From Trichoplax adhaerens (taxonomy: Eukaryota; Animalia; Placozoa): a stretch of DNA of 64,000 bases. Below are positions 1 to 16,341 of the stretch, piece by piece. The notes under the pieces were generated by a model. It did not search any database and was not told the DNA's origin. It saw only the letters and a list, made by a program, of their open reading frames with translations. Each line of letters opens with the position of its first letter. The first letter of the stretch is position 1. Position numbers and translations under genes: made by a program. The stretch covers positions 620,001 to 684,000 of the forward strand of contig NW_002060965.1 of assembly GCF_000150275.1 (NCBI RefSeq), in the 5' to 3' direction.

Positions 1-3000
1 CTCCTATGGCAATAGCATTAATTGGTGGCAACATCTTGCATGATGATATTCAATTTCAAAATCAGTTTAAAATGAACGGAAGCTCTCTTGAAAATGGTTA
101 TGCAACGAAATCAGTAAAATCCGCTAAAGTCGAAAAAATAAAATTTGCGTTAGGCAAAGCATTCGATACCGTCGACGTTGAGTTAGCTAGTAAATTACGG
201 CAATTGGTTACTTTTCAAAAATGTCCAAAGATTCCATTAAATCCATTAAATGTTTTATGGCAACTTAACGATGGACAAGTAGAAAATATTATGAATCAAT
301 TAGCTAAGCAAAGTTTAGTTTTAATTACAAAAAAACGACGAGATAAGTAAGTAAAAATTCAATTAATTCAAAGGCTAATCCTATAATCAGCGATACCCGT
401 ATTCAGTTGGACTAGTTTGTTATTTTACTTTTGGGTGTAGGAATAAAATGAAGAAATTTTCAATTTTCGACCATACAAATGAATGATTTAATATCCTTGA
501 TTAGTCTTTTGAGGTTCGAATTGTAACTGACTATCTTTAACCTTTTTATTTCTACTTTTAGTCAATTACCAATCTATGAATTACATGATATAGTCATGAA
601 CTATCTAGTCGAAAAATCAACAAACTTAATGGAAATGCATCAGTCTCTGATTCGCCAGTATGAGGATAAATTCAATGGCGATTGGTTAGCTATCATGGAC
701 GATGAGTATATGCGCGATCATTTCATCTATCATCTACTACAAGCTAAAGAATATGATAAAGTCATGTCGATTTTAACCAATTTAGAATGTTTGGAAGTAA
801 AGTTACGAGCTACATTAATATCTAGGGTATTGAACGACTTCCTTCAATGTCGTTCGATATTAAGCAAAGAGGTAAAGATCTGCTTCAGTTTTTTATTAGA
901 CTGCAGTATTCTATGTTTTGACCACTATTCGTCTTGCTACGAGTACGCGTATATTACTTGTTCTGATAGTATAACATTTTCAAGAGTTATTGAACCGAAC
1001 GATTTAGGCTTTAATGAAAGTTTAAATCTGAATCAGTTAAATAGTTATATTTAGGAACTTTATAAATTGGCATTTTATAATTTTATCACTATATGATATT
1101 CATACTGCTGATAGAAATGGTATTCCATAGTACTTTACTGTAGATATTTATGAATACTGATCTTTCGCCTTATAACAGGAATTAAAGATTTAAAGTTAGA
1201 TCCTTATAAAAGTGATATTCTAGTAATTCAGATCTCTTATTCTGTGTAGAAAGTTTATAAGTCTAAACTTGTCATCATCCTGGACACATGGCTAATTATG
1301 TATAGCAGTAAATTTAAAAACTATGATTGCGTACGATTATAGCTACTAAACTGCAGTTCTGTCATGAAATCCTTCTACGCTAACAAAGTTATAAATAGCA
1401 TTAGGTGTACTTGCTCTATTAATTATAAAATGAAGTTGAAATAGTGGTTTAAATTCATGAATTTTAACCTTTTTTGCTTGTAATTATTTATATTGGTCTA
1501 GAACTGGGAAGCGATCAGTCAATATTACCAATTTGTTATTTGTAACGGTAACATCTACAATATTAATCCTCAGCAAAGTATTATTCAAATGGCCTTGAGT
1601 AAGCTTGGCTGGCCTGATATTTACGATAAAGCGGAAAAATTGGCAAAGAGATATTGCCAGGAATCACTATATTTTAAATGGAGGTAAGATGTTATCAAAA
1701 CCGCCATTAGACAAACTGTTCGTCGTCAATTCTAACAGCTATAGCCTATTTCAAACCACCTGAGTTAACTTGTGGCAATAGCAAGATTAAAAATCAGCAG
1801 CAATCCATCATCCTATTACTTTGATCATTTGTCGTAAATTGCTTATTAATTGGTCCAAGCTGAGCTTTAAAGTTAATACTACAACTTTTTCTCTATTTTT
1901 TAATCGATAGCAACAATCATCAATACGATGTTACCGATCAATCCATTTCATCTACGGAAATCCATAACGATCGAATAACATGTTGCAGATTTTCACATGA
2001 TGGCAGCAAAATTGTATCATGTTGTGATGGAGGCGAAATTAAGGTTTGATAGTGTCCTATTCTCAATTTATTTATACAAATTTTAATCGATTCAGTGACA
2101 ATTATCCTGCGTAGAACTTTAAATTTAACTAGAGTTCTTCCATCTCATAAGGTCTGGGATAGTTTATCCTCCGCTGTATTAATTTCCATTAACTGTGGCC
2201 ACAGTGATCGAATAACCCACTGTTGCTTTTCACCTAATGATAAACTCATTGCCACATCATCGTGGGATCACTCTGTAAAGGTAAATTGTTTATAATACTA
2301 TAATTATTTTAAATAAGCGAACTAATGTTTAAGATTTCGTAATGAATAATACTGATGCTGTGAGAGAAAATAAATTCACTTACCGGAATTATTTACTCTG
2401 ATACATTCCTATCATAGTCTATTATAACTAATTACTATCAACAAGAATGTTGTTTTGATCATAATCATCAGAATGTTCAGAGCACTATCATTAATCATTT
2501 TCTCCGATGGCCTTATCATGGCCTGCAACGTAATTTTGTATCTAGATCGTTTTAATGATCATAGCATTTGATCGATTTCCCTAATAGCTTTATTGTAAAT
2601 TATTATGGCATCATGTTATCTAGATCATCAAAATAGCATTTTATTCATGAATTCCTTCGATGGTCATTTAAACCTAGAATATAAACTTATAAAACTATTT
2701 ATTGCAGATTTGGGATGTCTATACCGGGAAAATTGTATTTAAATATGAGAGCCATTTATTTGCTGTTAATTGGTGTGAATTTTCCATGGACGGCGAAAAA
2801 ATAGTTTCCTGTTCCGCTGACAAATTAATTAAGGTTGATATAATTGAGTGTATCATTTTAGAGTTTGCTTATATATTATTTTTATCAAACGCAACATGAT
2901 TTTGCGTAAAGATGAATGTAAACATAAGAAACCATTTGCCTATTTTCTGATATTTATCGGTACCCTTTATGATTTGGTTTAGATATGGGATAGCAGAACC

Positions 3001-6000
3001 GGTAAAGATCTTGTCATTTGTCGTGGCCACAGCGGTGGAGTTTTACAATGCCGTTTTTCCAAAGATGACAGAAAAGTCGTTTCTTGTTCATCTGACGAAT
3101 CTTTAAAGGTAGAATTGTACTATAATGCTGCTTGTTTTGTGTAAACTTATCGCTATGCTAAATCCTGTTGATAACATAGTGAGTTAACAGCGAAAGGATA
3201 TACGGTTTAATATTAACAGAAACACCATGTAATACTGTAGATTAGTTGACGGAATTTCATAGGGATAACTCCGATATACTCTCAGGCTTCCTAACATGGA
3301 TGGCTAAAGTATCGTTCTGTGTTATGAACCCTTAGAAATGATGATACAAATAGTAGAATTTGAGAGTATTCAGCAATTCCATCATGATATTTTTAGATCT
3401 CATAACATTTGGCTTTAGCACGGTGTATTTAAATTATTAGAATGATAACTGTCTAATCGTCGCAGCAGTAGAAAAATAGTCCCTAAGAACATTAATCGCT
3501 CTCTTTGGTTTCTATTCTACCATAAGATGTGGGATACCAGCAATGGCAAACTAATTTTCTCATGTCGTTGCCCTCATCGGGTTTCCGCCTGCTCATTTTT
3601 CGATGATTGCAATAAATTAATGTGCATCTGTCGAAACACAGTATGCATGTGGAATGCTCATAATGGATCATCACTAGGCCAATTTTATTGCTCGGGAGAA
3701 ATTACAGCGTCCGCCGTTAGCTTAGACAGTAAATTTTTTGCTCTGTGCGTTTACAATGTCTTCAAGAAGAAAGATATTTCTTTACAAGTAAGGAGTAACT
3801 TATGTACTAAACTATTGCAGCTAGTTGCATTAAATCAGCTGTGGTAACCAATCATTTCGATTAGAACCAGTAGTAATTGGAATAAAACTACTAATATTTA
3901 CCAAGAGTTGTACTTTCATCCGTTCTTTCTCCTAGGTATGGGATAATAAAAAGAAAAAATTAATATCTATCTACTACGGACACTCGAATAATATTTATAG
4001 TGTTCAATTTTCGCCAAATGATCAAACTATTGTTACTGCTTCCTATGATAAGACCATTAAGATATGGCACCGTAATAAGAAAAAATTAAATCGCGCCGTT
4101 CAAGTTAAGAATAATTTACCCAGTTTAGAGTTATACGAATGCAAATTTATCGAAAACTGCCTTGTAGTTTATGCGGTACATGACGAAAAAAATCGATTAA
4201 AGGTAGGTTATATGGTCCGGAGTATTTTGCTTGATTCGTAGGGAGATAATTATACCTCTTACCAAGATATCACCGATTCTGTTAAAAGGAAGTTAACAAC
4301 TTTTACTTTACCATCATTGGATGAAATTTCTGTTATTCATTAATTGCTATACCTCAAGTACGGCCTGATCATTTCTATATAATTATCCACATGTAGAAAT
4401 TACAATTTTCAATAATTTATTGAGTACTCGATGTTTGCATTGAATAACTACCAGACCAGTAATTAAAACATTTTGAAATTGCAACAGTACAATAATATTT
4501 ATTTATCATTAACTTTTAATGTGTCGGCTTAAAAATGACAGCTAACCCTTAAGCAATCTTAAATTTAGTTTCCAATGCTTAAAATGATAGCGAATCTTCC
4601 TAAAATTATAGTTTAAATAACATTTTCCACTTCCTTTTGAAAAGTCTAAATTAGAAATTACAATAATATATTCATCTTTTCTTGATATATCCAGTTTAGC
4701 TAACTATTAGCTATTCAATATTTTTGATATTAAAACTTTCAATTTGAATTTCCCATGACTTAATGAATCTTTTACTAATTTGTCCATTAATTGCTAGCAA
4801 TATTTTATCGTCGCACTACTGCGTTAGTAAGACCTATTGTCATTGCTTTTGAAATCTATTCCACTATCCTGCTTTTAGATGTATGCTGGAACCGACAAAG
4901 AGTTTAAATTAATCTCAAAGTATAGCACCTTTGGCCATAGAATTACCGCAATCTGTATATCAAATAACGGAAAGCAAGTTGCAATAGGTTTTAGTGAAGC
5001 TGGTGGAGTACAGGTAAGAGGAGATGTGAACCATTTTTAACTAAGAATTTTATACTTATACAGGTAAAATTGCCTATCTGCAGTCCTTTACTTAGCAAAT
5101 TCATAACGTCTATTATAGATAAATATCTTAGCATTTTATTACTCTCTAGTTATTATCCGCCAACGACATCAAGAATTGCCTATGGCATGTTAAAGGAAAC
5201 TTGTGCGAGATGACGTGTATTACGTTAATCAAATTTAGCAGCAATGATAACAATTTGATTGTTAAAGATGGCAACCGGCAATTATTTGTAAGTTGTATCA
5301 TTTATCTTAGTTCTATGGATTGAACAGATTAGTTAGAAAGTCAACTTAAAACATCAAATTAATTTTGAAATGGGTTAGGTCTTAAGCTCGACCGGAGCTG
5401 TACTCTTTAAGAGTGGTAAAAATCATGGCGATATCACCGGTTGTGCAATATTTCCAACTGGCCAAAGAGTTCTTGGTTGCTATGACGAAAGTTTTAAAGT
5501 ACGTTATCCTGTCATTCTATTTATTTTCTTCTTTAATTTTGCTGGAAAATAAGATTTTATAAAATGCCTTTCCTTCTAAACTAATTCGTAATATTTAATT
5601 GTTCTTAAATGAATTATTCTAGATTTGGCATTGCTATGACGTAAGCCAAGTTGTCACTGTTAGAGCGCATAACGATATTATTGCGCATTTCGATATCTCT
5701 TATGACGAAAATATGCTAGCAACTCTCTCCTTTGACAAGATAGTCAAGGTGAGTCGTCAAGTCTGCTAATATTCAAGCTAAATCATAAAACTGTAAAGTT
5801 TTTGCTAAAATATTGCAATATATCTACAGCACATTATATAGAAGAGTTCCAAGTTCAATCAAAACGCATGCAAATTATAATACTTTCTGCTAATTAAAAG
5901 TTTGCCAGTATAACTCCTACTGGACGATACTATATCTGCAAGATCAAGGATCAGAGCATAGAATTACATAGATTTTCACTGAAAGTATACAGAATTAACA

Positions 6001-7184
6001 AGTCTTATATAAAATATAAAATATTTAAGCTAAATCATAGGATGTTAAAGTTCATATTTAAACATGAATACTGTACCGGTACCAAAGGATTCTATTATCG
6101 CACTCTGAATCCACTGTATATAAGAGAGCTGAGTTAAAATGTTCATAAAAGCTTTTAGCCTTTATTAAATAAAAATATATTAAAAAAAATTATGCTATAA
6201 CCTATCACATAGAGAAACTCAGTGCTGAAATATATCTAACACATAGTACCTGCTTAATGCTGTACAGTAATTATATGATTGAAACTTATCATTTTACGGC
6301 ATATTGCTCATAGATTTGGGATTGCACCACTGGTTCACAATTGGCTTCCTTAGATCATTACTCTAGCGTTAATACTTGCAAATTTTCAATCAACTGCCAA
6401 TTTTTGGCCACTTGCTGTGTTGATGGTTCAGTTAAGGTAACGATGACCTATAAATAAGTACGTTAATGTTCATACGATATTATTATTTATCCTAATTTTG
6501 AGTATGCAGAAACTTTAAAGGTATAACTTTATTCCAATACTTAGATTAGCTGCCTATACTGTATTGTGTGATTTGTCATTTTATGAATGTAAAGTAAAAG
6601 TTGACTGATTTTCATATCCTTTCTGTTTCGGATACAAATTAATAATACGAAAAGTAGAACTGTTATTAAAAATAATTCATATAGAGGAAATTTTAAGAGT
6701 TGAATGTTTTTAATGTTACGATGATAGCTTAACAGAACATTTAGCCATCAAATTGATGTAAGGTTGAAACTTTAAAATTGAAAAGGTCTTTCTTCTCAAT
6801 TAGATGTGGAATGTTCGGTCTGGAAGATTGCGATACCGATTTCGCGGCCATACGACCCAAGTTTTAAATTGTTATTTCATGCAAGACGATAGAATTCTCT
6901 TAACTGTAGGTGATAGTTTAGCTTGGTGGCAAATTGAAGATGAAGAATTAATCCAACGCTTCCCATTATATGGTAATGCATCGATGGCTTATTACGCTGA
7001 TGATATGAAATCATTAGCTACAACAGATGATAAAGGGTATTTTTATTTTCTATCTCAAATTGTACCTAAAAATGAAGCGCCACGACGGCTATCCTTCGAT
7101 CGACGATTGTCATTCGACCGTCGAATATCATTTGACAGACGAATATCGTTTGATAAAAAAAAGGAATCATGTATAATTTGTTAG
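1..7184 (+). CDS. APAF1: Apaf-1-like NB-ARC / helical domain / WD40 protein (5'-truncated by window edge), multi-exon
   Basis: Hand-spliced exons: <1-346, 562-871, 1502-1683, 1911-2043, 2152-2280, 2708-2833, 2983-3108, 3527-3787, 3936-4202, 4879-5013, 5150-5287, 5379-5498, 5623-5748, 6314-6436, 6804-7184. Motifs: PMAIALIGG (GxP motif, cf. Apaf-1 GSPLVVSLIG), YELHDIV (LHD/MHD motif), helical domain SIIQMAL...DIYDKAEKLAK...YFKW resembling Apaf-1, then about 13-14 WD40 repeats (GH...FSxD...S.D..K.WD). May be a lineage-specific Apaf-1 paralogue rather than the strict orthologue. Confidence 0.88.
7083..7154 (+). repeat. Coding tandem repeat, 4 x 18 nt, encoding (RR[LI]SFD)x4
   Basis: cga cgg cta tcc ttc gat / cga cga ttg tca ttc gac / cgt cga ata tca ttt gac / aga cga ata tcg ttt gat. 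Differences between units are almost all synonymous. Confidence 0.95.
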
Positions 7185-7934
7185 ATTCTATATGTAAGAC
7201 GTTAAGTGGCTGTCTTTTTTCGGATACTGTTCATATTTATAACTGTTACAACAGGTTTTATCCATGATAGTGATCAAATAAAAGCGGAAACATATTTTGG
7301 CTAGGTTAAAAGACTTTTATCGGTGTTATTAGAAACTTATTAATGTTAAGCACCGGTAACGTATAATCTATGTATATATTTTATATACTAATATATCCAC
7401 AAAATTGATTGCATTTGAGAATATAAGGCTGAAATATCAATTTATAGTATTCGCGGGAAAAAATCTGGGATGTGTTAAAGTATATAATAGTCAATAATAC
7501 ATAGAGTTGTATACATGGAATTTCATTAATGATATTCAAGAAATTGATATGGTATCAATGTGTAAAAGCACAATAGATGTGTGATAATACTAAATGATTA
7601 TAGAGATCGAGTGAAAGACTTCTAAAGATATTTAAAAATGTTTTTATCATGACTTTTAATTTTTTTAAAATCTTTCAAAAGAATGATACTCCTATATAAC
7701 AGAAAATTAATAGGATATTTAAAGTGTCGGCAATTATAAACTTCATTTTGTTACAATTTCACAGTAAGCACAAACAACTTCAAGATTTTATATATTAAAT
7801 GCTATTTTGATACTGCATAAAAAATAAAAATCAATTTAAGAATAACTGTGCATTAATTATCAAAGACACTGAGTCAAACATTGCATATGGGATATTTTAA
7901 AATATCATTCCATTTGCCCAGATCGTTCATGTAA

Positions 7935-10180
7935 TATTATGATAGATGATTTTACCAACGTTACGAGGACCAATATAAATCCCTCGTATCAGATTATTAA
8001 GGCATTAGCCTTGATTTAATGCTCTGTCATACGCATTAAAGTAAATCTTTTGTTCTAAAGCTGTAAGATCATAAAATAGAATATAAAACATATTACATTA
8101 TATGAGAAAACACTTGCTACAATTTCAGGATTATAACGGTATAGCCATGCTGGTATCATTTCCTCAAAATAGTCTAACAACATTATACACAGCTCTTCTA
8201 GCCATCGATCGAATCTGTTGCCGCCTCTGGGCTCTCTTTAAATTGTTCTTTGCCAAAGTAGTAAGAGCATGGTTTTACTCAAGCCTGAAAGTCTAATATT
8301 GAATGATTTCTCATATGCTGAAATAGCCTCATCATACATGCTTTGACTTTCATAGGCGAATCCTATGTTGTAATATAAATATCCAAGATCGGGATGATTT
8401 GTACCAAGGACTGATAAATTAATTCTAAGTGACTTGTCAAACATAGAATGAGCCTCATAATGCTTGATTTGTTTCCGTAGAAAACTCTTAGGTTGTGATA
8501 TAAATCCGTAGCATTGGGATGATCTTCACTGAAGACTGAAAATCAAATATTAAGTGACTTGTAATATATAGAAAGAGCTTCAATATACTTTCTTTTCTTA
8601 ATATTAGCATCTCATATGCTTTCATATGACTGAGCAACATCGGAATGATTTTGACCAAGAACTGACGATCGAATATTAAGTAATTCATACATAGAAAGAG
8701 CCCCGTCATACTTGCTTTAATTTTTATAGAAACTCCCATGTTTTTATATGAATTTGCAACATCAGAATGATTTTGACTAAAGACTGATAATCGAATACTA
8801 AGTGATTTATCACACAAAGAAAGGGCCTCATTGTACTGAGTTGATTCCTGTAGATAAATCCTATGTTTTCATACGAATCTGTAACATCGAAATGGTTTTG
8901 ACCAGAGTGATAACTAATCGAACATTAAGTGATTTATCATACATAGAAAAAGTCTTGTTATACTTGCCTTAAATTTTATAGATAATTGCCGTGTTATTGT
9001 ATGAATCTGTAACATCGGGATGATTTTGACTAAGAACTAGTAATCGAATATTAAATGATTTATCATACATAGAAAGAACCTTATCGTACTTGCCTTTGTC
9101 TCTGTAGACAATTCTATGTTGGTATATGAATCTGCAGCATCAGAATGGTTTTGACCAAAGACTGATAATTAATCGAATATTAAGTGATTTATCATACATA
9201 GAAAGAGCCTTGTCATACTTGCTTTGATAATGGAAGACAATTCCCATATTGCGATATAATTTGGCAACGTTGGGATGATTTTGACCAAAGACTGATAATC
9301 GAATATTAAGGGATTCATCATACGTAGAAAGAGCCTCGGCATACTTGCCCTGATTTTTATAGACAGATCCAATGTTATCATAAGAACATTCACATCGGAA
9401 TGATTTTGATCAAAGACTAATAATCGAATATTAAGTGACTTATCACAGAAAGAACCTCGTCGTACTTGCCTTAATTTTTAAGGATAAATCATATGTAGTT
9501 ATACGAATCTGTAACATCGGGATAATTTTGACCAAAGACTGATAAAGATCAAATATTAAGTGACTTATCGTACATAGAAAGAGACTCGTCAAATTTGTTT
9601 TAATAATGAAAGATAATTCCCATATTGTTATATAATTTAGTAACATCGGAATAGTTTTGACCAAGGGCTGATAATCGAATGTCAAGTGATTTATCATACA
9701 TAGAAAGAGTTTCTTCATACTTACTATAGTACGTAAGAGCGCTCCATTTCATGATATGAATTAGCAATATGCAAATCATCGTCATCTAAACATTTTAGTT
9801 TTATTTCTAGTGATTTTTACTATCTTCTAATGCTCTATTCCAATCGTTTTGGGATATTTAATCTGCCTCTGTCAGTATAAGCATTCAGTCTTTTTGACTT
9901 CATCTTACAGTTTATTAGCCGGGTGTCGCCCCTTCGCAAGCCATTCATTGGCTTTCAAGATTTTATATTGCAACCTGTAAGTATTATAAATTTCAAGAGA
10001 AATATCGCACCGAAGTCCATCAAAATCAGTAGAAGTATAGATATTGATTCAATTTCATCTATAGTTTGAGTAAAATAAGTCAACTTTCCCTAAATTGTAT
10101 GCGGTCCGGTATTACTGACCCTGTTTGAATGATGATCTATCTGTCAAGGATAGTAGGGATAGTAGATATAGTGGGCGGAT
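7935..10180 (-). pseudogene. Decayed tandem paralogue of the TPR-Roc-COR-DD gene: about 12 TPR (42-aa) repeats plus the start of the Roc exon
   Basis: A ~126-nt periodic motif (CATAGAAAG-like) recurs about 12 times from 8317 to 9700, and the TPR frame is broken into pieces (ORFs 8238-8444, 9600-9785, others out of frame). The Roc-exon remnant reads ALEQKIYFNAYDRALNQG*CLNNLIRGIYIGPRNVGK, with an in-frame TAA at 8005-8007 and a +1 insertion right after the P-loop Lys (~7950). It is collinear with 14880-16340. Confidence 0.88.
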
Positions 10181-11732
10181 TAATAAAGTGGAATTATATC
10201 AAACTAACATAGAAAATGCAGGTTCATGAAACTCAACTGCCAAATCAAATTATTTAAAGCTTAGGCGAGTTAATATGCACTATCGTAGATAATAACACAA
10301 AAGAAGACCAGAAATGATATGTGATGTATGGTAAATTAATACAATGTACAATCAAATATCTATAACTCAATAATGAAACATAATATGAGGATTGTGGTAT
10401 GATGTAAGATGGCTTACATTAATATCGATTAGATATTTTCAATTTATAATCGAACCTAGATAGGACTAGTGAGTGTTATGACGGTTATGTAGTTTTGATA
10501 GCTTACCAGTCGCGGTTCGATCATGAACAAGTTACTTAAATTTAGCTATAATATTATAATAGATTTTCACGCCATTGGACCATGTGTGTCGTCCACGTTA
10601 CCATCACACCAGTGGATCGAAATTGCAGTTAATGGGTAAACGAATACCGTGCAAAGAATAATTAATTTACATGCACTCCGTTTTTATAAATATCAATTTA
10701 ACTACCGATGTACGGTAAAAATGGAGGTAATTTTATAAAATTGATGATGCTATCCAACCTGGCATGCTTAAATCATCTAAATCGTTTATATTTAATGCAT
10801 TTAAAATCATTTGATTCAGATATATATTAGCTATATCATCAATCAACATATGCGTATAAATACCTTATAAGTGACACGTTAAAGAGTTAACAGCTATACT
10901 AGCAGAGTAAGACATCATATAAGATATTATATCAATATGTACTGTAGATAATTAGCTCATTTAGCAGAATTACAGTATAATCATGAACGAAGTTTTAGGC
11001 CAAGATCATGACTTAGCTTGTAATTTTAGAGATGTGGGTTGCCAAATAATGAATTGCAATTTACTGTACGTTCTCACTATTTTTATATGCATTATGTGCG
11101 TATACAACAAGAATTCGTACAGTCACAGCGGATATACTATAAATAAATATAGTAAATGTATGTGTAGTCTATTCAGATAATTTGGTAGTATCTACCGGGC
11201 CAAAATAAATAATTATAAGCATTTATATATATAGCTTTATTCTATATTAAATGCTGCTAGATTTATCAATGTATTAAATAATTAATACAAGTGTAAGCGC
11301 ATCTGGATAGTAAAATTGAGAAATATTTGAAGATCCAAAAGAACTGAGCGGCCTTTAGTAATGATTCATAAGCTATTTAGTAGGCTTCCAGCTAATAATT
11401 TAAATAAGATGATATAAATCATATTTTGTATCAAAACATTGTAATTTCACTTTTTCAAAATCACACGGGAAAAAATTAAATGAAGATTGGCTTTGTTATA
11501 ATAAGCATATTGCGTATAACATTATCGTGACAGTTAAGTTACTGAGTTAAAATAATAACGTATCTAACTGATTTAACTACCAGTGACTGCAAAAACTTGA
11601 TCTGTTTCAACTAAAGTACAGAAAGAATTTAAAATAAATTTCAACTGTAGGATTTGACTGTACTATTAGATAAGTCAATCCAAATATATTACAAATTGCA
11701 ATCTGCAGCACAAAAAAAACTTTGAATACTGG

Positions 11733-14700
11733 TTATTCACGCTGTAAGAGTTTCGTTCGCTTCTTCTCCAATATAATATCATTTCTGTTTATCATTTTTA
11801 AAGCAATCTGCAATTCATTAAGGCTCGCATTTGGCTGTTTCGTTTTGTACCACAAATTAAGTAATTGCTTCGCTTGGTTATATACGTGATCGCGATTTTG
11901 TTCCTTGATAACCTCAACATCAATAGCTGGATCTAGCACCGTTGCTAATTTTATCCAATCTAAACCAATAGAGCTTGCAATAGAATGAAAATAATTTCTA
12001 GGATCTGCTAAATATGAGTGTGTATATACATCACAGTTAGTCTTTAAATTTTTAAATGGCGAATAAGCTATGATATAAATCCACAATAGTTTACTGTTAA
12101 CTAGCTCAAACGTTTCAATCGTGATTGGAATGATTTGTATCATTATTTATATAATCACAATATGAATAAGATAGACGATAGCTCGTATGCTCATTAGAGT
12201 ATGTTTATTTAAATTACTTCACAGCTATTGATTATATTTAGTATTCAAACTTCTTAAAAGAAGCAGTATAGAAACTGGTTTTACCTTTATCATTCGCGTC
12301 TATCCATCGCTCTATGGGATTGTAAGGAAATTTTAGATTAGTAATCGTAAGAATTTTTATCGAAACGGAGCAGCAACGCTACATACTGAATTCACGTATA
12401 CAGTATATAAATACTCTGTAAATTTACAGTCGTATTTATATATGAGTTTTTATTTAAATAGATTATACAGGTTCCTTTTATTACTTGCTTTTTATGTGTT
12501 CTAATGTTATACCATTATTCATACTAGCATACGTGAAAGATAGTGTAAAGCTATGGAGTTAACGTATTCTACTCTTGTGTTGCTCATATTCTCATATAGT
12601 AACATTTTACTTGCTTATTTTAGTTCTTGCTATGCAATTACTATTGATAAAATCATAGTTATCGTAACAGTAGTTTAAAGATTTTATATAAGGAAACCCG
12701 AGACGCAAAGATTATTTGCTGGTTACTGTTATTATCAAAAGATGTCGAAGTTACGCGAATCATCATGATTATCTATAGAAATAATGATACAGATAGATCT
12801 TAAATACTTACCCATCCATAACTTTTCGTCATAAACCATCCAATCGCCAAGAGATTGACTTGCAAATCGCATTCTACAATGTTGACACTGAATCCAATTT
12901 ATATCTCCCGCCTTATATTTATCGACAATACTCGTTTGCTTGCAACATTCACTGCATTTAATGTAAAATCGACAACTAGCTCCTCGAAATCTTATCATTC
13001 TTTTATCCACTATCGACATCAATCTATTTTTAACAACATCTTGAGGCCGGTTATGATATATAGAATTCTTAACTTTATCTATAACTGGCTTGGCAATAAT
13101 TGATCTATTTATTTTCTGAAAGCAATATTGTAATCCTATATAAGATTCCTCTTTCTTGACAATGAGATAATGATCATCATCTGCTAGATAATATTTAGCA
13201 CATTGATAATATAGTTCTACATCGGTATTATTCCATTGTTTTAAGCATGATGAAAGTAGACAGTAATAAATTCCATCTGGGATATAAGGAATATCTTGAC
13301 TGTCGTATCCGATATAAAGCCAATCTGATACATGATATTTTGATAAATCAAATGGCTTAGCATCATCTCTCAATAAATATGGAACAAAATATTCATATTC
13401 TACTGCACTACATGTATTGCCTTCTTCATGTCTAATGGCACATATAATATCATACGCCTCCATTAGATTCAATATTGTCTTTTTACTATTTTCATCCAAA
13501 TTAAATTTATCGATAGCATAATCGATGTAATTTCTTGATAATCTTCCTGTTTCACTGGCTTTTTGGTATTCATATCTCACTTGTAGACTACCATCTAGAT
13601 GATCTTTTAGTTGAATGATTGCACGAAATATATTTAATAACCAATCGACATTAGTTATAACAATTCCTGAATCGCCTACTTTATGGCAAAATATAACTTC
13701 TCCTAAATCATGTAAGTACATTAGCATATCTCTTAATTCATCATCACTTTTGTACAATCCATACTCTTGAGCTAAGTATTTTATTTCTTGCACTGTCATG
13801 ATATTATTCACTTGAGTAGTTCTTATTAGATTAATAGTACGAGATATCGATTGATTGTTATGCTTATGTAGAGATGCGCTTAATATTGTAGCCATAATGT
13901 ACCATCGAATAGGAACAGGATTACGAATAAATGGTAACGATTGTACAAACGTTTTAATAACGTAATGTAAATGAAGACAATATTGCTGACGTTGCTCCAC
14001 TGTCGATGGTCTATTATCATCAGGGTCGCAATTAAAAATAATACCAGAAGAGTAGATATGACTCTTATAAGACGGTATAGAAGATATCAGCTCTCTAACA
14101 AATTGTTTAAATCGACGATGTCGTTCTTCTTCATGTTTAATGCAATCGCTATGGGAAGCTACTAGAATAATTATAGGTAATGAGTATTGTGCATGGTCAT
14201 CGTTGACGTTAACGTCAATTTTACTTTGATTACTGTGGCCTCCTATAATTGATGTTAACCATTCTTGCATAGCCTTTAAATATGTCATTTTAAGTACTTG
14301 TCCATCTCTTGTTAGCACATTAGCGTTAATATCTTGATTAATGTTAAATGTGAGAATATATATACTATTAGCAGACATGAATGGATGATGTGTAACATGA
14401 TAGATTGCGTGACCTCCGAAATCCCATATTTTAATATATTGGTTATTATCACGATTATTTTTGTTTTGGTTTATGATTGATGAACAATAATGCTCATGTA
14501 AGCTAGTTACAGGCTGAGATTGAGTTTGAACCGTTTTTGACGATATAAGAGCTCCTACATCATCGATAATACCTATAGGAGAATGTGGTTTATCTTCGAA
14601 TTGATTTTCCTCAGATAGATCATCCATGCTAATTTGTTGATCTATGATACTGGTATCCGTTGTTTGCTGACTGATATTTTGCTGATTCTCTGCTGTTACT

Positions 14701-16341
14701 TCGGCTAATTGTTCTATGACTGTTGTCACTGTATCATGTAATATCTGATTGAAATCACAAATTTCCAAATTATGAATATTATAAGATTCAGTCTCTACCA
14801 TTTTATGAGAGTCTTCAGCAACTCGTGTTGGTGATTGATTGCTAATTAACACTTGTTGAGTAAATAATTTGATAATAGATGATTTACCAACATTACGAGG
14901 ACCGACAAACATCCCACGAATCAAACTATTACGGCATTGACCTTGATCTAATGCTTTGATATATGCATTGTAATATTTCTTTTGTTGTAAAGCTATAAAA
15001 TAACAAAATAAAATACTATATTTAATGAAGAATTACTTAATAAAGTCATACCAACCATAACAATTCGATTAAAGATTTACCTTTGTCTTGAGCTTGTTGA
15101 TTACTGTTGCCATGTGGGTTGTTATTGCTGATGTTATTATTTTCCGGTGGCGTAATCTTTATTATACCATTTCCCCAGAATAGCCTAACAAAGCCATCGA
15201 AAGCTCTTTTAGCTATTGATGTTGACGGCTGTAGGTTGGATTGCTGCCATCGTATAATAGCTATGGTATCTCTCATCTTTTTAACACTGGAATGATTTTC
15301 ACCTAAGACTGATAGTTTTATGTTTAGTGACTTCTCATACATAGAAAGAGCCTCACCATAATTGCGTTGATCAAAATAGACATTCCCCATATTGTTATAA
15401 CATTCTGCAACATTGAGATGATTGTCACCAAGGACTGACAATCGAATTTTAAGCGATTTATTATACATTGAAAGGGCCTGTTCAAGCTTACCCTGATTCC
15501 TATATACAATGCCCATGTTGTTATAAGATTGTGCCACATGGGGATGATTGTGGTTAAGGGCTGACAATCGAATTTTAAGTGACTTTTCGTACATGGAAAG
15601 AGCCTCGTCATGCTTTCCTTGTTTCTCATAGACGACTCCCATGTTGTTATATGACTTCGAAATATCAGGATGGTTTTGGCCATGAACTGATATTCGAATT
15701 TTAAGGGACTTGCTATACATAGAAAGGGCTTCATCATATCGGCTTTGCTTCTCAAAGGTAACTCCGATATTGTTATACGATTTGGCAATATGAGGATGAT
15801 TATGTCCAAGGACTGATAACCGAATTTTTAGAGACTCGTCATACATATCAAGAGCCTTATCATATTGACCTTTAAAATCATAAATTCGTCCAATTTCATG
15901 ATAAGAATTGGCAATACGTAAGTCTAGCTTGCCTAAGTACTTTAATTTCATCTCCAAAGATTTCTTACTATCTTCTAATGCCCCATTTAAATCACGCTGT
16001 GATATCTTCAGCTGACCTTGTCGGTATAAAAATTCAGCCAGTCTGACTGGATCCTGCAGTTTATTAGCCAGATATTTTCCCTTAGCAATCAGCTCCCTGG
16101 CTTTAGTCCACTCGTATTGCAATGTATAAATGTGACAAGTATTAAGATAAAGATCGCATAGGAATTGATCTATATCAGCGGAAGTATTGGGTATTGATTC
16201 AATTTCGTTAATAGCTTGCATGTAATAACTTTGTGCTTCTTTCAAATTGTAAGCTGTCAGGCATTTCTGACCTTGTGCACATAGAGATTGTATCTGATGA
16301 GGAATAGTACTCGCTCTATGACAAAATTGATCGGCGGCCAT
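11733..16341 (-). CDS. ROCO-family protein: TPR repeats - Roc GTPase - COR - Zn ribbon - death domain
   Basis: Exons 16341-15081, 14992-12812, 12311-12285 (27 nt) and 12007/12004-11733, all joined by phase-1 GT-AG introns. The N-terminus has divergent TPRs plus five 42-aa TPRs (A.SYNN.G..Y..QG.YDEALSMY.KSLKIRLS.LG.NH). Roc motifs are GPRNVGKS, WDFGG and LVASHSD. COR hallmarks include LMYLHDLGEVIF, VDWLLNIFRAII and YFVPYLL. A CSEC..CQHC pair follows, then a death domain (IASSIGLDWIKLATVL...QAKQLLNLW...LQIALKMINRNDI). Confidence 0.9.

What the first reader, a model, noticed from the sequence alone, without database searches (positions are those of the whole stretch)
7070..7184. Apaf-1-like protein ending in four tandem PKA-type sites, a basic patch and a CaaX box: a candidate lipid-anchored, phospho-switchable apoptosome
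Seen: after the last WD40 blade the protein ends APRRLSFDRRLSFDRRISFDRRISFDKKKESCIIC-stop. The four 18-nt units differ almost only at synonymous positions, which points to selection on the peptide rather than recent slippage. Established: RRxS-hydrophobic is the canonical PKA consensus. C-aliphatic-aliphatic-X at the C-terminus is the prenylation signal, and X=C is compatible with farnesyltransferase. A polybasic stretch plus prenyl group with adjacent phosphosites forms the electrostatic membrane-release switch of K-Ras4B, Rap1 and RhoA. Vertebrate Apaf-1 is soluble and has no such tail. Inference: this NB-ARC sensor may be membrane-tethered and released or sequestered by cAMP/PKA signalling. 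I do not know this regulatory mode for Apaf-1-type proteins.
Basis: partly seen in the sequence, partly recalled or inferred. Interest (0 to 1): 0.82.

Follow-up and report, generated by a model that had tools for sequence, protein, structure and literature searches.

The report
Apaf-1-like protein with lipid-anchor tail
One of the Apaf-1-like cell-death sensor genes of the simple animal Trichoplax really ends in a selected 41-residue tail that looks like a kinase-controlled lipid anchor, which would put an apoptosome-type protein on a membrane, but no RNA, orthologue or biochemical evidence could be reached.

Summary
The last exon (window 6804-7184) is joined by canonical GT/AG sites. It adds a tail to the final WD40 blades: linker, four tandem RR[L/I]SFD units, KKKES, CIIC, stop.

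- **Gene:** complete Apaf-1 architecture (CARD, NB-ARC, WHD, HD2, about 15 WD40 blades).
- **Tail position:** mammalian Apaf-1 ends within 1-3 residues of the point where this tail begins.
- **Selection:** of at least 10 nucleotide changes among the four units, 9 are synonymous and 1 is Leu/Ile (0 of 20,000 simulations match this).
- **CaaX:** a strict CaaX ends 0.25% of random open segments here. The closest paralogue, on another scaffold, also ends in a CaaX (CSVL).
- **Machinery:** prenyltransferase beta subunits, ICMT, 14-3-3 and RIIa-domain genes are present.
- **Precedent:** a published synthetic switch (tandem Kemptides, Lys, CaaX) has almost this design and moves between membranes on PKA activation.

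No transcript or placozoan orthologue could be reached, and PKA is only one of several kinases that fit the sites. I found no report of a prenylated Apaf-1 or NLR. An unverified scan note (s1-746124) reports another NB-ARC protein ending in a CaaX in this genome.

Verdict: new variant of a known kind, moderate interest.

The parts
6..350 (+). Exon with the winged-helix domain of the Apaf-1-like gene. The CARD and P-loop exons lie upstream of the window, at G000:C1392:614403-614774 and 618173-618664.
   Evidence: PF21296 APAF-1-like WHD, E 5e-5, 23.8 bits, below the 27-bit cut-off. CARD PF00619 6e-6 and NB-ARC PF00931 7e-6, both over cut-off. The P-loop exon's best PDB matches are Apaf-1 (1z6t, 1.4e-8).
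596..1054 (+). Exon with the Apaf-1 helical domain HD2
   Evidence: PF17908 APAF1_C, E 3e-13, 50 bits, over cut-off. The only PDB hit is Apaf-1 (1z6t). This locus ranks fifth among HD2 matches in the genome, fourth among distinct loci.
1864..6436 (+). Series of about 12 WD40 exons (about 13 blades). The penultimate exon is 6314-6436, ending ...GSVK with a GTAACG donor at 6437.
   Evidence: Open segments with WD40 matches. The donor was read.
6802..6803 (+). Splice acceptor AG of the last exon (intron 6437-6803). Joining it restores the WD40 motif ...SVK|MWN in phase 0.
   Evidence: Paralogue last exons start at the same point with IWN, IWD, IWE or VWN.
6804..7058 (+). The last two WD40 blades (residues 1-85 of the last exon)
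   Evidence: The exon aligns to Apaf-1 residues 1176-1246 of 1248-1260. A profile of the five paralogue exons aligns to 1153-1247 of 1249, E 4e-36. AlphaFold2 gives pLDDT mostly 68-85 for residues 1-80 and a final strand at 79-85.
7059..7082 (+). Linker (IVPKNEAP) between the propeller and the repeats
   Evidence: pLDDT below 50 from residue 86. The canonical paralogue and mammalian Apaf-1 stop about here.
7083..7154 (+). Four tandem 18-nt units, each encoding RR[L/I]SFD: four dibasic R-R-x-S-Phe kinase consensus sites
   Evidence: 9 of at least 10 changes synonymous. Unique in the genome.
7155..7169 (+). KKKES: a lysine patch directly before the CaaX cysteine. It is encoded by an A8 run (7155-7162), so the CaaX frame depends on the length of that run.
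   Evidence: The net charge from the Ala-Pro before the first unit to the CaaX cysteine is +6.
7170..7184 (+). CaaX box CIIC followed by TAG stop
   Evidence: Strict CaaX background is 0.25%. The closest paralogue ends in CSVL.
7277..7282 (+). AATAAA polyadenylation-type hexamer, 93 nt after the stop
   Evidence: Read. No RNA evidence.

Best explanation
**What it is.** The gene is one of five CARD/NB-ARC/WD40 (Apaf-1-type) paralogues of a Trichoplax-like placozoan. Its last exon adds a 41-residue flexible tail to the end of the second propeller, at the point where mammalian Apaf-1 stops.

**How it most likely works (inferred).**
1. Cys123 of CIIC is farnesylated. The -IIC tripeptide is then removed and the new C-terminus is methylated.
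2. The lipid works together with the KKK patch and the four RR[L/I]SFD units. This stretch has net charge +6. In an extended chain, Arg/Leu-or-Ile/Phe lie on one face and Arg/Ser/Asp on the other. Together they hold the protein on acidic membranes.
3. A basophilic kinase phosphorylates up to four serines. PKA is the best sequence match. This turns the charge to about -2, loosens the electrostatic part of the anchor and may create 14-3-3 sites. The sensor would then move off the plasma-membrane-type surface to endomembranes or the cytosol.
4. Oligomerisation into a wheel would multiply the anchors at the rim.

**Status of each step.**
- Shown: the sequence, its selection as a peptide, the family assignment, the position of the tail, the second CaaX in the closest paralogue, and the presence of the machinery.
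- Inferred: prenylation, phosphorylation, the kinase and the relocation.
For: - **Tail and frame:**. Canonical GT/AG join that restores a WD motif.
- **Purifying selection on the repeat peptide:** (9 synonymous changes plus 1 Leu/Ile out of at least 10; 0 of 20,000 simulations).
- **Uniqueness of the repeat:**
- **Apaf-1 architecture:**
- **Tail lies beyond the Apaf-1 end:**. It is predicted to be flexible.
- **CaaX is rare by chance:** 0.25% strict. The reciprocal-closest paralogue (38% identity in the last exon) also ends in a CaaX, CSVL. P of at least 2 in 5 is about 1.3e-3.
- **Machinery present:** three prenyltransferase beta loci and ICMT; 14-3-3 and RIIa-domain genes.
- **Literature:**
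  - Tandem Kemptide + Lys + CaaX is a working, reversible PKA membrane switch whose serines act additively (PMC8361095).
  - LKB1 carries a PKA/RSK site two residues before its farnesylated Cys (PMC3898322).
  - CSLC is farnesylated (PMC3566133).
  - Ile at a2 is favourable, and neither a2 nor X of CIIC is a restricted residue for yeast FTase (10.1101/2023.02.06.527295).
Against: - No transcript, EST or protein record for this 3' end could be reached.
- No orthologue from another placozoan could be examined, so conservation rests on paralogues and on the internal repeat.
- Three of the five paralogues, including the most canonical one, lack a CaaX. The upstream tandem neighbour has a short basic tail without one.
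- Each unit carries an Asp that cancels half of its Arg charge.
- In the synthetic switch, three Kemptide units mislocalised and extra lysines weakened the response. Four units plus KKK may therefore not behave as a clean switch.
- The CaaX frame depends on an A8 run.
- The kinase is not identified by the motif alone.
Confidence: 0.45

Rival explanations
1. Constitutive anchor. The tail is prenylated and binds membrane, but the RR[L/I]SFD units are a fixed amphipathic, basic membrane- or partner-binding segment. They are not a phospho-switch.
For: The CaaX, the KKK patch and the +6 charge. The strict alternation of hydrophobic and polar residues is read from the sequence. AlphaFold2 places one unit as a weak strand (residues 102-108, block pLDDT about 60). 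The paralogue with CSVL has no RRxS units.
Against: Ser and both Arg are invariant in all four units despite saturated synonymous change. That is what a kinase site needs and more than charge or hydrophobicity alone needs. The Asp reduces membrane affinity and is hard to explain for a pure anchor.
Confidence: 0.2
2. Soluble phospho-regulatory tail. The repeats are multi-site kinase and 14-3-3 docking sites that gate the WD40 sensor or oligomerisation. The terminal CIIC is not lipidated, or it serves another role such as a PDZ-type ligand.
For: Four R-R-x-S sites under selection. Two 14-3-3 genes are present. The farnesylated motif CSLC of the prostacyclin receptor also binds a PDZ domain. From my own knowledge, not checked here: mammalian Apaf-1 is inhibited by RSK phosphorylation and 14-3-3 binding.
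Against: A strict CaaX exactly at the stop, directly after a Lys patch, is a 0.25% event, and the closest paralogue repeats it. CIIC has no residue that restricts FTase.
Confidence: 0.15
3. Caspase-cleavable tether. Each unit reads [L/I]-S-F-D followed by Arg or Lys, which gives an aliphatic P4 and Asp P1 as in initiator-caspase sites. The caspase that this scaffold activates could cut the scaffold from its anchor, and Ser phosphorylation at P3 could block the cut.
For: Four tandem [L/I]SFD tetrapeptides are read from the sequence. The protein carries a CARD. Kamm et al. report CARD-caspases in Trichoplax sp. H2 (PMC6321704).
Against: From my own knowledge of caspase specificity, not tested here: P1' is Arg or Lys in all four sites, which caspases disfavour, and P3 is Ser rather than Glu. 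There is no experimental or comparative support.
Confidence: 0.05
4. Not part of the mature protein. The tail is skipped or truncated by splicing or polyadenylation, the gene is silent, or the CaaX frame is an assembly artefact of the A8 run.
For: No RNA or protein record was found. An A8 run lies just before the CaaX. Other scan notes report decaying Apaf-1-like copies in this genome (unverified).
Against: The synonymous-only divergence of the repeat shows long-term translation in this frame. All exons read as intact WD40, NB-ARC or CARD pieces. The splice sites are canonical, and an AATAAA lies 93 nt after the stop. The selection evidence covers the repeats but not the last 10 codons.
Confidence: 0.08

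Closest known systems
Mammalian Apaf-1 (PDB 3sfz, 5juy, 3jbt)
   Same: CARD, NB-ARC with P-loop, WHD, HD2 and about 15 WD40 blades. The last exon aligns to the extreme C-terminus of Apaf-1.
   Different: Apaf-1 ends 1-3 residues after the last aligned strand and has no tail, lipid signal or tandem kinase sites. This gene is one of several divergent paralogues, and cytochrome c binding is untested.
Synthetic FES-PKA switch (Kim, Wu and Inoue 2021, PMC8361095)
   Same: Tandem R-R-x-S-hydrophobic PKA sites, lysine(s), then a CaaX at the very C-terminus. In cells this design shifts reversibly from the plasma membrane to endomembranes on PKA activation, and its serines act additively.
   Different: The synthetic design has two Kemptide units, one Lys and CVIM. 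Here there are four units, each with an Asp, then KKK and CIIC, attached to a protein of about 1,250 residues that oligomerises. In the synthetic series, three units mislocalised and extra Lys damped the response.
K-Ras4B farnesyl-electrostatic switch; RhoA and Rap1 C-termini
   Same: A polybasic stretch plus a prenylated CaaX, with serine(s) inside the basic stretch whose phosphorylation weakens membrane binding (background in PMC8361095, PMC6888304).
   Different: Those are small GTPases with one or two sites and Lys-rich stretches. This is a STAND ATPase with four repeated Arg-based sites.
LKB1/STK11 C-terminus
   Same: A non-GTPase signalling protein with a PKA/RSK site (Ser431) two residues before a farnesylated Cys433 (PMC3898322).
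   Different: LKB1 has a single site and no repeat. It is a kinase, not a death-fold scaffold.
MARCKS effector domain (my own knowledge; named in PMC8361095)
   Same: A basic stretch interspersed with Phe and several Ser. It binds membrane in extended form next to a lipid anchor and is released by multi-site phosphorylation.
   Different: MARCKS has an N-terminal myristoyl anchor, PKC sites and no Asp.
Prenylated guanylate-binding proteins GBP1/2/5
   Same: Innate-immune NTPases that oligomerise and need a C-terminal CaaX for membrane attachment (PMC9005921, listed; details are from my own knowledge).
   Different: They are dynamin-like GTPases, are not homologous, and have no tandem kinase sites.

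Membership tests
Apaf-1 / CED-4 / Dark family of STAND ATPases | N-terminal CARD | tested here: met
   PF00619, E 6e-6, 26.6 bits, over the 23.9-bit cut-off, on the exon at L011:404-775.
Apaf-1 / CED-4 / Dark family of STAND ATPases | NB-ARC nucleotide-binding domain with Walker A and Walker B | tested here: met
   PF00931 over cut-off. The best PDB hits are Apaf-1. G-S-G-K-T and L-I-L-D-D-V were read.
Apaf-1 / CED-4 / Dark family of STAND ATPases | Winged-helix domain | tested here: inconclusive
   PF21296 at E 5e-5 but 23.8 bits, below the 27-bit cut-off.
Apaf-1 / CED-4 / Dark family of STAND ATPases | Apaf-1-type second helical domain (HD2) | tested here: met
   PF17908, 50.2 bits against a 22.8-bit cut-off.
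Apaf-1 / CED-4 / Dark family of STAND ATPases | C-terminal WD40 propellers homologous to those of Apaf-1 | tested here: met
   About 15 blades read exon by exon. The profile of the last exons hits the Apaf-1 C-terminus at E 4e-36.
Apaf-1 / CED-4 / Dark family of STAND ATPases | Ligand-triggered oligomerisation and caspase activation | not testable with these tools
   Needs biochemistry.
CaaX-prenylated proteins | Cys at -4 from the true C-terminus, non-charged a2, permitted X | tested here: met
   CIIC followed by a stop. Ile at a2 is favourable, and X = Cys is not among the restricted residues K, P and R. CSLC is farnesylated.
CaaX-prenylated proteins | Accessible, flexible C-terminus | tested here: met
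   pLDDT is below 50 for residues 86-101 and 111-126. This comes from a low-depth model, so the evidence is weak.
CaaX-prenylated proteins | Prenyltransferase and ICMT present in the organism | tested here: met
   Three PF00432 loci and one PF04140 locus. The Rce1-type protease was not searched.
CaaX-prenylated proteins | Covalent isoprenoid on the cysteine | not testable with these tools
   Needs labelling or mass spectrometry.
Farnesyl-electrostatic switches (K-Ras4B type, FES-PKA) | Net-basic stretch next to the CaaX, with phospho-acceptors inside it | tested here: met
   Net charge +6, KKK at -5 to -3 from the Cys, and four Ser within 26 residues of it.
Farnesyl-electrostatic switches (K-Ras4B type, FES-PKA) | Phosphorylation-dependent change of membrane localisation | not testable with these tools
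   Needs cell imaging.
PKA substrates | R-R-x-S/T followed by a hydrophobic residue | tested here: met
   Four exact matches. The consensus is as cited in PMC8361095. The motif is shared with other basophilic kinases, so it does not identify PKA.
Caspase cleavage sites | Asp at P1 with a small residue at P1' | tested here: not met
   P1 is Asp and P4 is Leu or Ile, but P1' is Arg or Lys in all four units. The preference rule is from my own knowledge.

The most novel reading that the evidence does not exclude
A sub-clade of placozoan Apaf-1 paralogues consists of prenylated, membrane-resident death or immune scaffolds. The members seen so far are this gene (CIIC) and its closest relative on another scaffold (CSVL), possibly with other NB-ARC genes flagged elsewhere in the scan. 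In this gene the anchor has been elaborated into a four-site, kinase-gated electrostatic switch. Second-messenger signalling would then decide whether the apoptosome-like wheel assembles on a membrane or in the cytosol. This is a natural counterpart of the synthetic FES-PKA device.
Probability: 0.3. Interest if true: 0.75.

Novelty: new variant of a known kind. Interest (0 to 1): 0.55.

Why it matters
Apaf-1, CED-4 and Dark are treated as soluble or protein-tethered scaffolds. In three full-text searches I found no report of a lipid-anchored Apaf-1 or animal NLR.

Placozoans have an unexplained expansion of Apaf-1-like genes (PMC6321704). A membrane-targeted, kinase-gated member would give one concrete reason for that diversification: different paralogues guarding different compartments. 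It would also link cAMP-type signalling to cell-death or immune scaffolds in an early-branching animal.

The tail is also a compact natural version of an engineered PKA translocation switch, so it is easy to test as a GFP fusion in ordinary cells.

Tried and rejected
1. **Full phmmer of the last exon against 1.84 billion representatives.** The top 150 were generic multi-WD40 proteins whose scores come from many summed repeats. There was no self hit or orthologue, so it says nothing about conservation. Their C-termini showed no comparable tail. Pfam on four of them listed only WD40 families among the best 25 families shown.
2. **Word search of the last exon.** No hits. The search sees only proteins of 69-220 aa, so full-length models and longer transcript fragments are invisible.
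3. **Metagenome scan for relatives.** Nothing found.
4. **Supplements of Kamm et al. 2019.** They hold no NLR protein sequences.
5. **Supplements of the yeast CXXX screens.** The per-motif score for CIIC is not held, so I used the papers' general rules.
6. **Survey of C-termini downstream of 20 further HD2 loci.** My WD40/TPR reference set recognised only the three WD40-type paralogues already known.
7. **Lead from scan note s1-756319.** I located the motif at G000:C1414:6358684, but the surrounding 3 kb did not show which family it belongs to, so I dropped it.
8. **Recent slippage as the origin of the repeat.** Rejected: the units are 67-78% identical in DNA with no indels.
9. **Rab-type double-Cys motif.** Rejected: the cysteines are at -4 and -1, not CC or CXC, and the protein has no Rab fold.
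10. **Joined protein.** All searches were run exon by exon, by reference.

Full report
**Source.** The window is G000:C1392:620001-684000 of a 105.6-Mb, 1,414-contig, AT-rich (about 32% GC), intron-containing assembly. Other reports of this scan name the genome as Trichoplax adhaerens, and the gene content agrees with a Trichoplax-type placozoan. Every search was run exon by exon, by reference.

**Observation.**
- The open frame 6804-7181 (126 aa, TAG at 7182-7184) encodes two WD40 blades. It then runs through a short linker, four tandem RR[L/I]SFD units (7083-7154), KKKES (7155-7169) and CIIC (7170-7181).
- Tandem Repeats Finder reports period 18, 3.2 copies, 77% matches and no indels.
- The exon is preceded by a TTAG acceptor (AG at 6802-6803). 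The previous WD40 exon (6314-6436) ends ...GSVK before a GTAACG donor. The join is in phase 0 and restores the usual blade-end motif SVK|MWN.
- Paralogue last exons begin at the same point.
- An AATAAA lies 93 nt after the stop.

**More than chance.**
- The four units differ at 4-6 of 18 bases pairwise. The peptide differs only by Leu versus Ile. Of at least 10 changes, 9 are synonymous.
- Only 27% of possible single changes in these units are synonymous. None of 20,000 neutral simulations to the same divergence kept the peptide as similar.
- The repeat is therefore old, translated in this frame, and constrained at both Arg, the Ser, the Phe and the Asp.
- The doubled-unit pattern is unique in the genome.
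- A strict CaaX ends 0.25% of 3,582 random open segments from this genome, and a loose one ends 1.1%.

**The gene.**
- Upstream of the window lie a CARD exon (PF00619) and a P-loop exon (PF00931). The P-loop exon's best solved-structure matches are Apaf-1.
- Inside the window lie the WHD (just below cut-off), the Apaf-1 HD2 (PF17908, over cut-off) and about a dozen WD40 exons totalling about 15 blades.
- A profile of the five paralogue last exons hits the extreme C-terminus of Apaf-1 best (residues 1153-1247 of 1249, E 4e-36). The exon alone aligns to 1176-1246 of 1248-1260.
- Mammalian Apaf-1 therefore ends where this tail starts. The tail is residues 86-126 of the exon.
- AlphaFold2 on the exon gives confident blades up to about residue 85. 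The tail is low-confidence, with one weak strand over a repeat unit. That strand may only be filling the blade left open in the isolated fragment.

**Paralogues.**
- The genome has about 40 loci with an Apaf-1-type HD2. This is consistent with the published placozoan expansion (PMC6321704).
- Only five loci have a related WD40 last exon.
- The most canonical one (C1390) stops right after the last strand, as mammalian Apaf-1 does. One other (C1407, near 1.06 Mb) also lacks a tail.
- The upstream tandem neighbour ends in a short basic, Ser-containing tail without a Cys.
- The reciprocal closest relative of this exon (C1407:34681-35007, 38% identity) ends in CSVL, a geranylgeranyl-type CaaX, followed by a double stop.
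- Two CaaX ends in five has P of about 1.3e-3 under the loose background. This suggests that the lipid signal predates the split of these two genes and that the repeats were added later in this one.
- An unverified first-reader note of this scan reports another NB-ARC-TPR protein ending in a CaaX (s1-746124).

**Plausibility of the mechanism.**
- The genome encodes three prenyltransferase beta-type loci and ICMT. It also encodes two 14-3-3 genes and RIIa-domain proteins.
- CIIC has Ile at a2, which is a positive determinant. It has no residue that restricts yeast FTase: D, E, K or R at a2, or K, P or R at X (10.1101/2023.02.06.527295).
- X = Cys has a farnesylated precedent in the prostacyclin receptor motif CSLC (PMC3566133).
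- The stretch from the linker to the Cys has net charge +6. Four phosphates would bring it to about -2 (inference).
- With a six-residue period, an extended chain puts Arg, Leu/Ile and Phe on one face and Arg, Ser and Asp on the other. This is read from the sequence. The comparison with the MARCKS effector domain is from my own knowledge.
- The closest working analogue is synthetic. Kim, Wu and Inoue placed Kemptides in tandem with a Lys and a CaaX. They obtained a farnesyl-dependent, reversible, PKA-driven shift from the plasma membrane to endomembranes, with additive serines (PMC8361095).
- In the same study, three units mislocalised and extra Lys damped the response. Four units plus KKK therefore need not behave identically.
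- LKB1 shows the same pairing in nature: a PKA/RSK site next to a farnesylated Cys (PMC3898322).

**Limits.**
- I could not reach any transcript, annotated protein or placozoan orthologue for this exon. The representative library returned only generic WD40 proteins. The word search is blind outside 69-220 aa. The metagenome scan found nothing.
- The selection test covers the repeats, not the last ten codons. These follow an A8 run whose length sets the CaaX frame.
- The kinase is not identified. R-R-x-S-Phe with a hydrophobic residue at -5 also fits PKG and RSK/S6K, and the R(-3) plus hydrophobic(-5) part fits CaMK-group kinases (my own knowledge).
- The [L/I]SFD tetrapeptides resemble initiator-caspase sites, but P1' is Arg or Lys, which argues against cleavage.

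**Verdict.**
It remains untested.
- Three full-text searches found no prenylated Apaf-1 or NLR.
- I class it as a new variant of known kinds: an Apaf-1-like STAND scaffold combined with a farnesyl-electrostatic switch.

Noticed in passing
G000:C1407:34681-35007 (-) = L002:1429-1755 (-): The closest paralogue of this gene's last exon (38% identity) ends in ...SKMCSVL followed by two stops. This is a geranylgeranyl-type CaaX on a second Apaf-1-like CARD/NB-ARC/WD40 gene. It has no RRxS repeats.
   Followed up: partly
G000:C1392:607994-608290 (+) = L003:1501-1809: The tandem upstream Apaf-1-like paralogue ends in a short basic tail (…DRIGSFSLRRNLRRK, stop). It resembles one degenerate repeat unit and has no Cys. 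No CaaX remnant lies after the stop.
   Followed up: partly
window 8238-16341 (-): The convergent neighbour gene has kinesin-light-chain-type TPR arrays (open frames 8238-9785) and a death-domain-like C-terminal exon (11733-12143). Other first-reader notes describe it as a TPR-Roc-COR-death-domain gene (s1-769917, s1-769933). I did not examine it.
   Followed up: no
G000:C1414:6358684-6358707 (+) = L036:1432-1524: A 30-aa open frame ends in ...SSCCIIF before a stop. This is the only match to that pattern in the genome (the reversed control also gave 1). It lies about 17.5 kb upstream of long-open-frame loci at C1414:6376178 and 6388014 that gave weak HD2 matches. The gene it belongs to was not established.
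   Followed up: partly
G000: C1291:1665, C1414:6376178, C1414:6388014, C1384:76830, C1364:22263: Several HD2 matches, two of them just under the family cut-off, lie in very long uninterrupted open frames (717-1,587 aa). Nearly all the other HD2 loci lie in short exon-sized frames. These may be intronless NB-ARC genes.
   Followed up: no
window 7083-7154: Seven of the eight Arg codons in the repeat are CGN, in a genome with about 31% GC. This may reflect descent of all units from one CGA-CGA founder rather than codon preference. I did not test this.
   Followed up: no
P0117 (library protein, 2483 aa): A very long WD40-rich protein of unknown origin ends in ...CCCVIS, a palmitoyl-plus-farnesyl-type end. 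Its N-terminal domains were not visible among the 25 Pfam families listed.
   Followed up: partly
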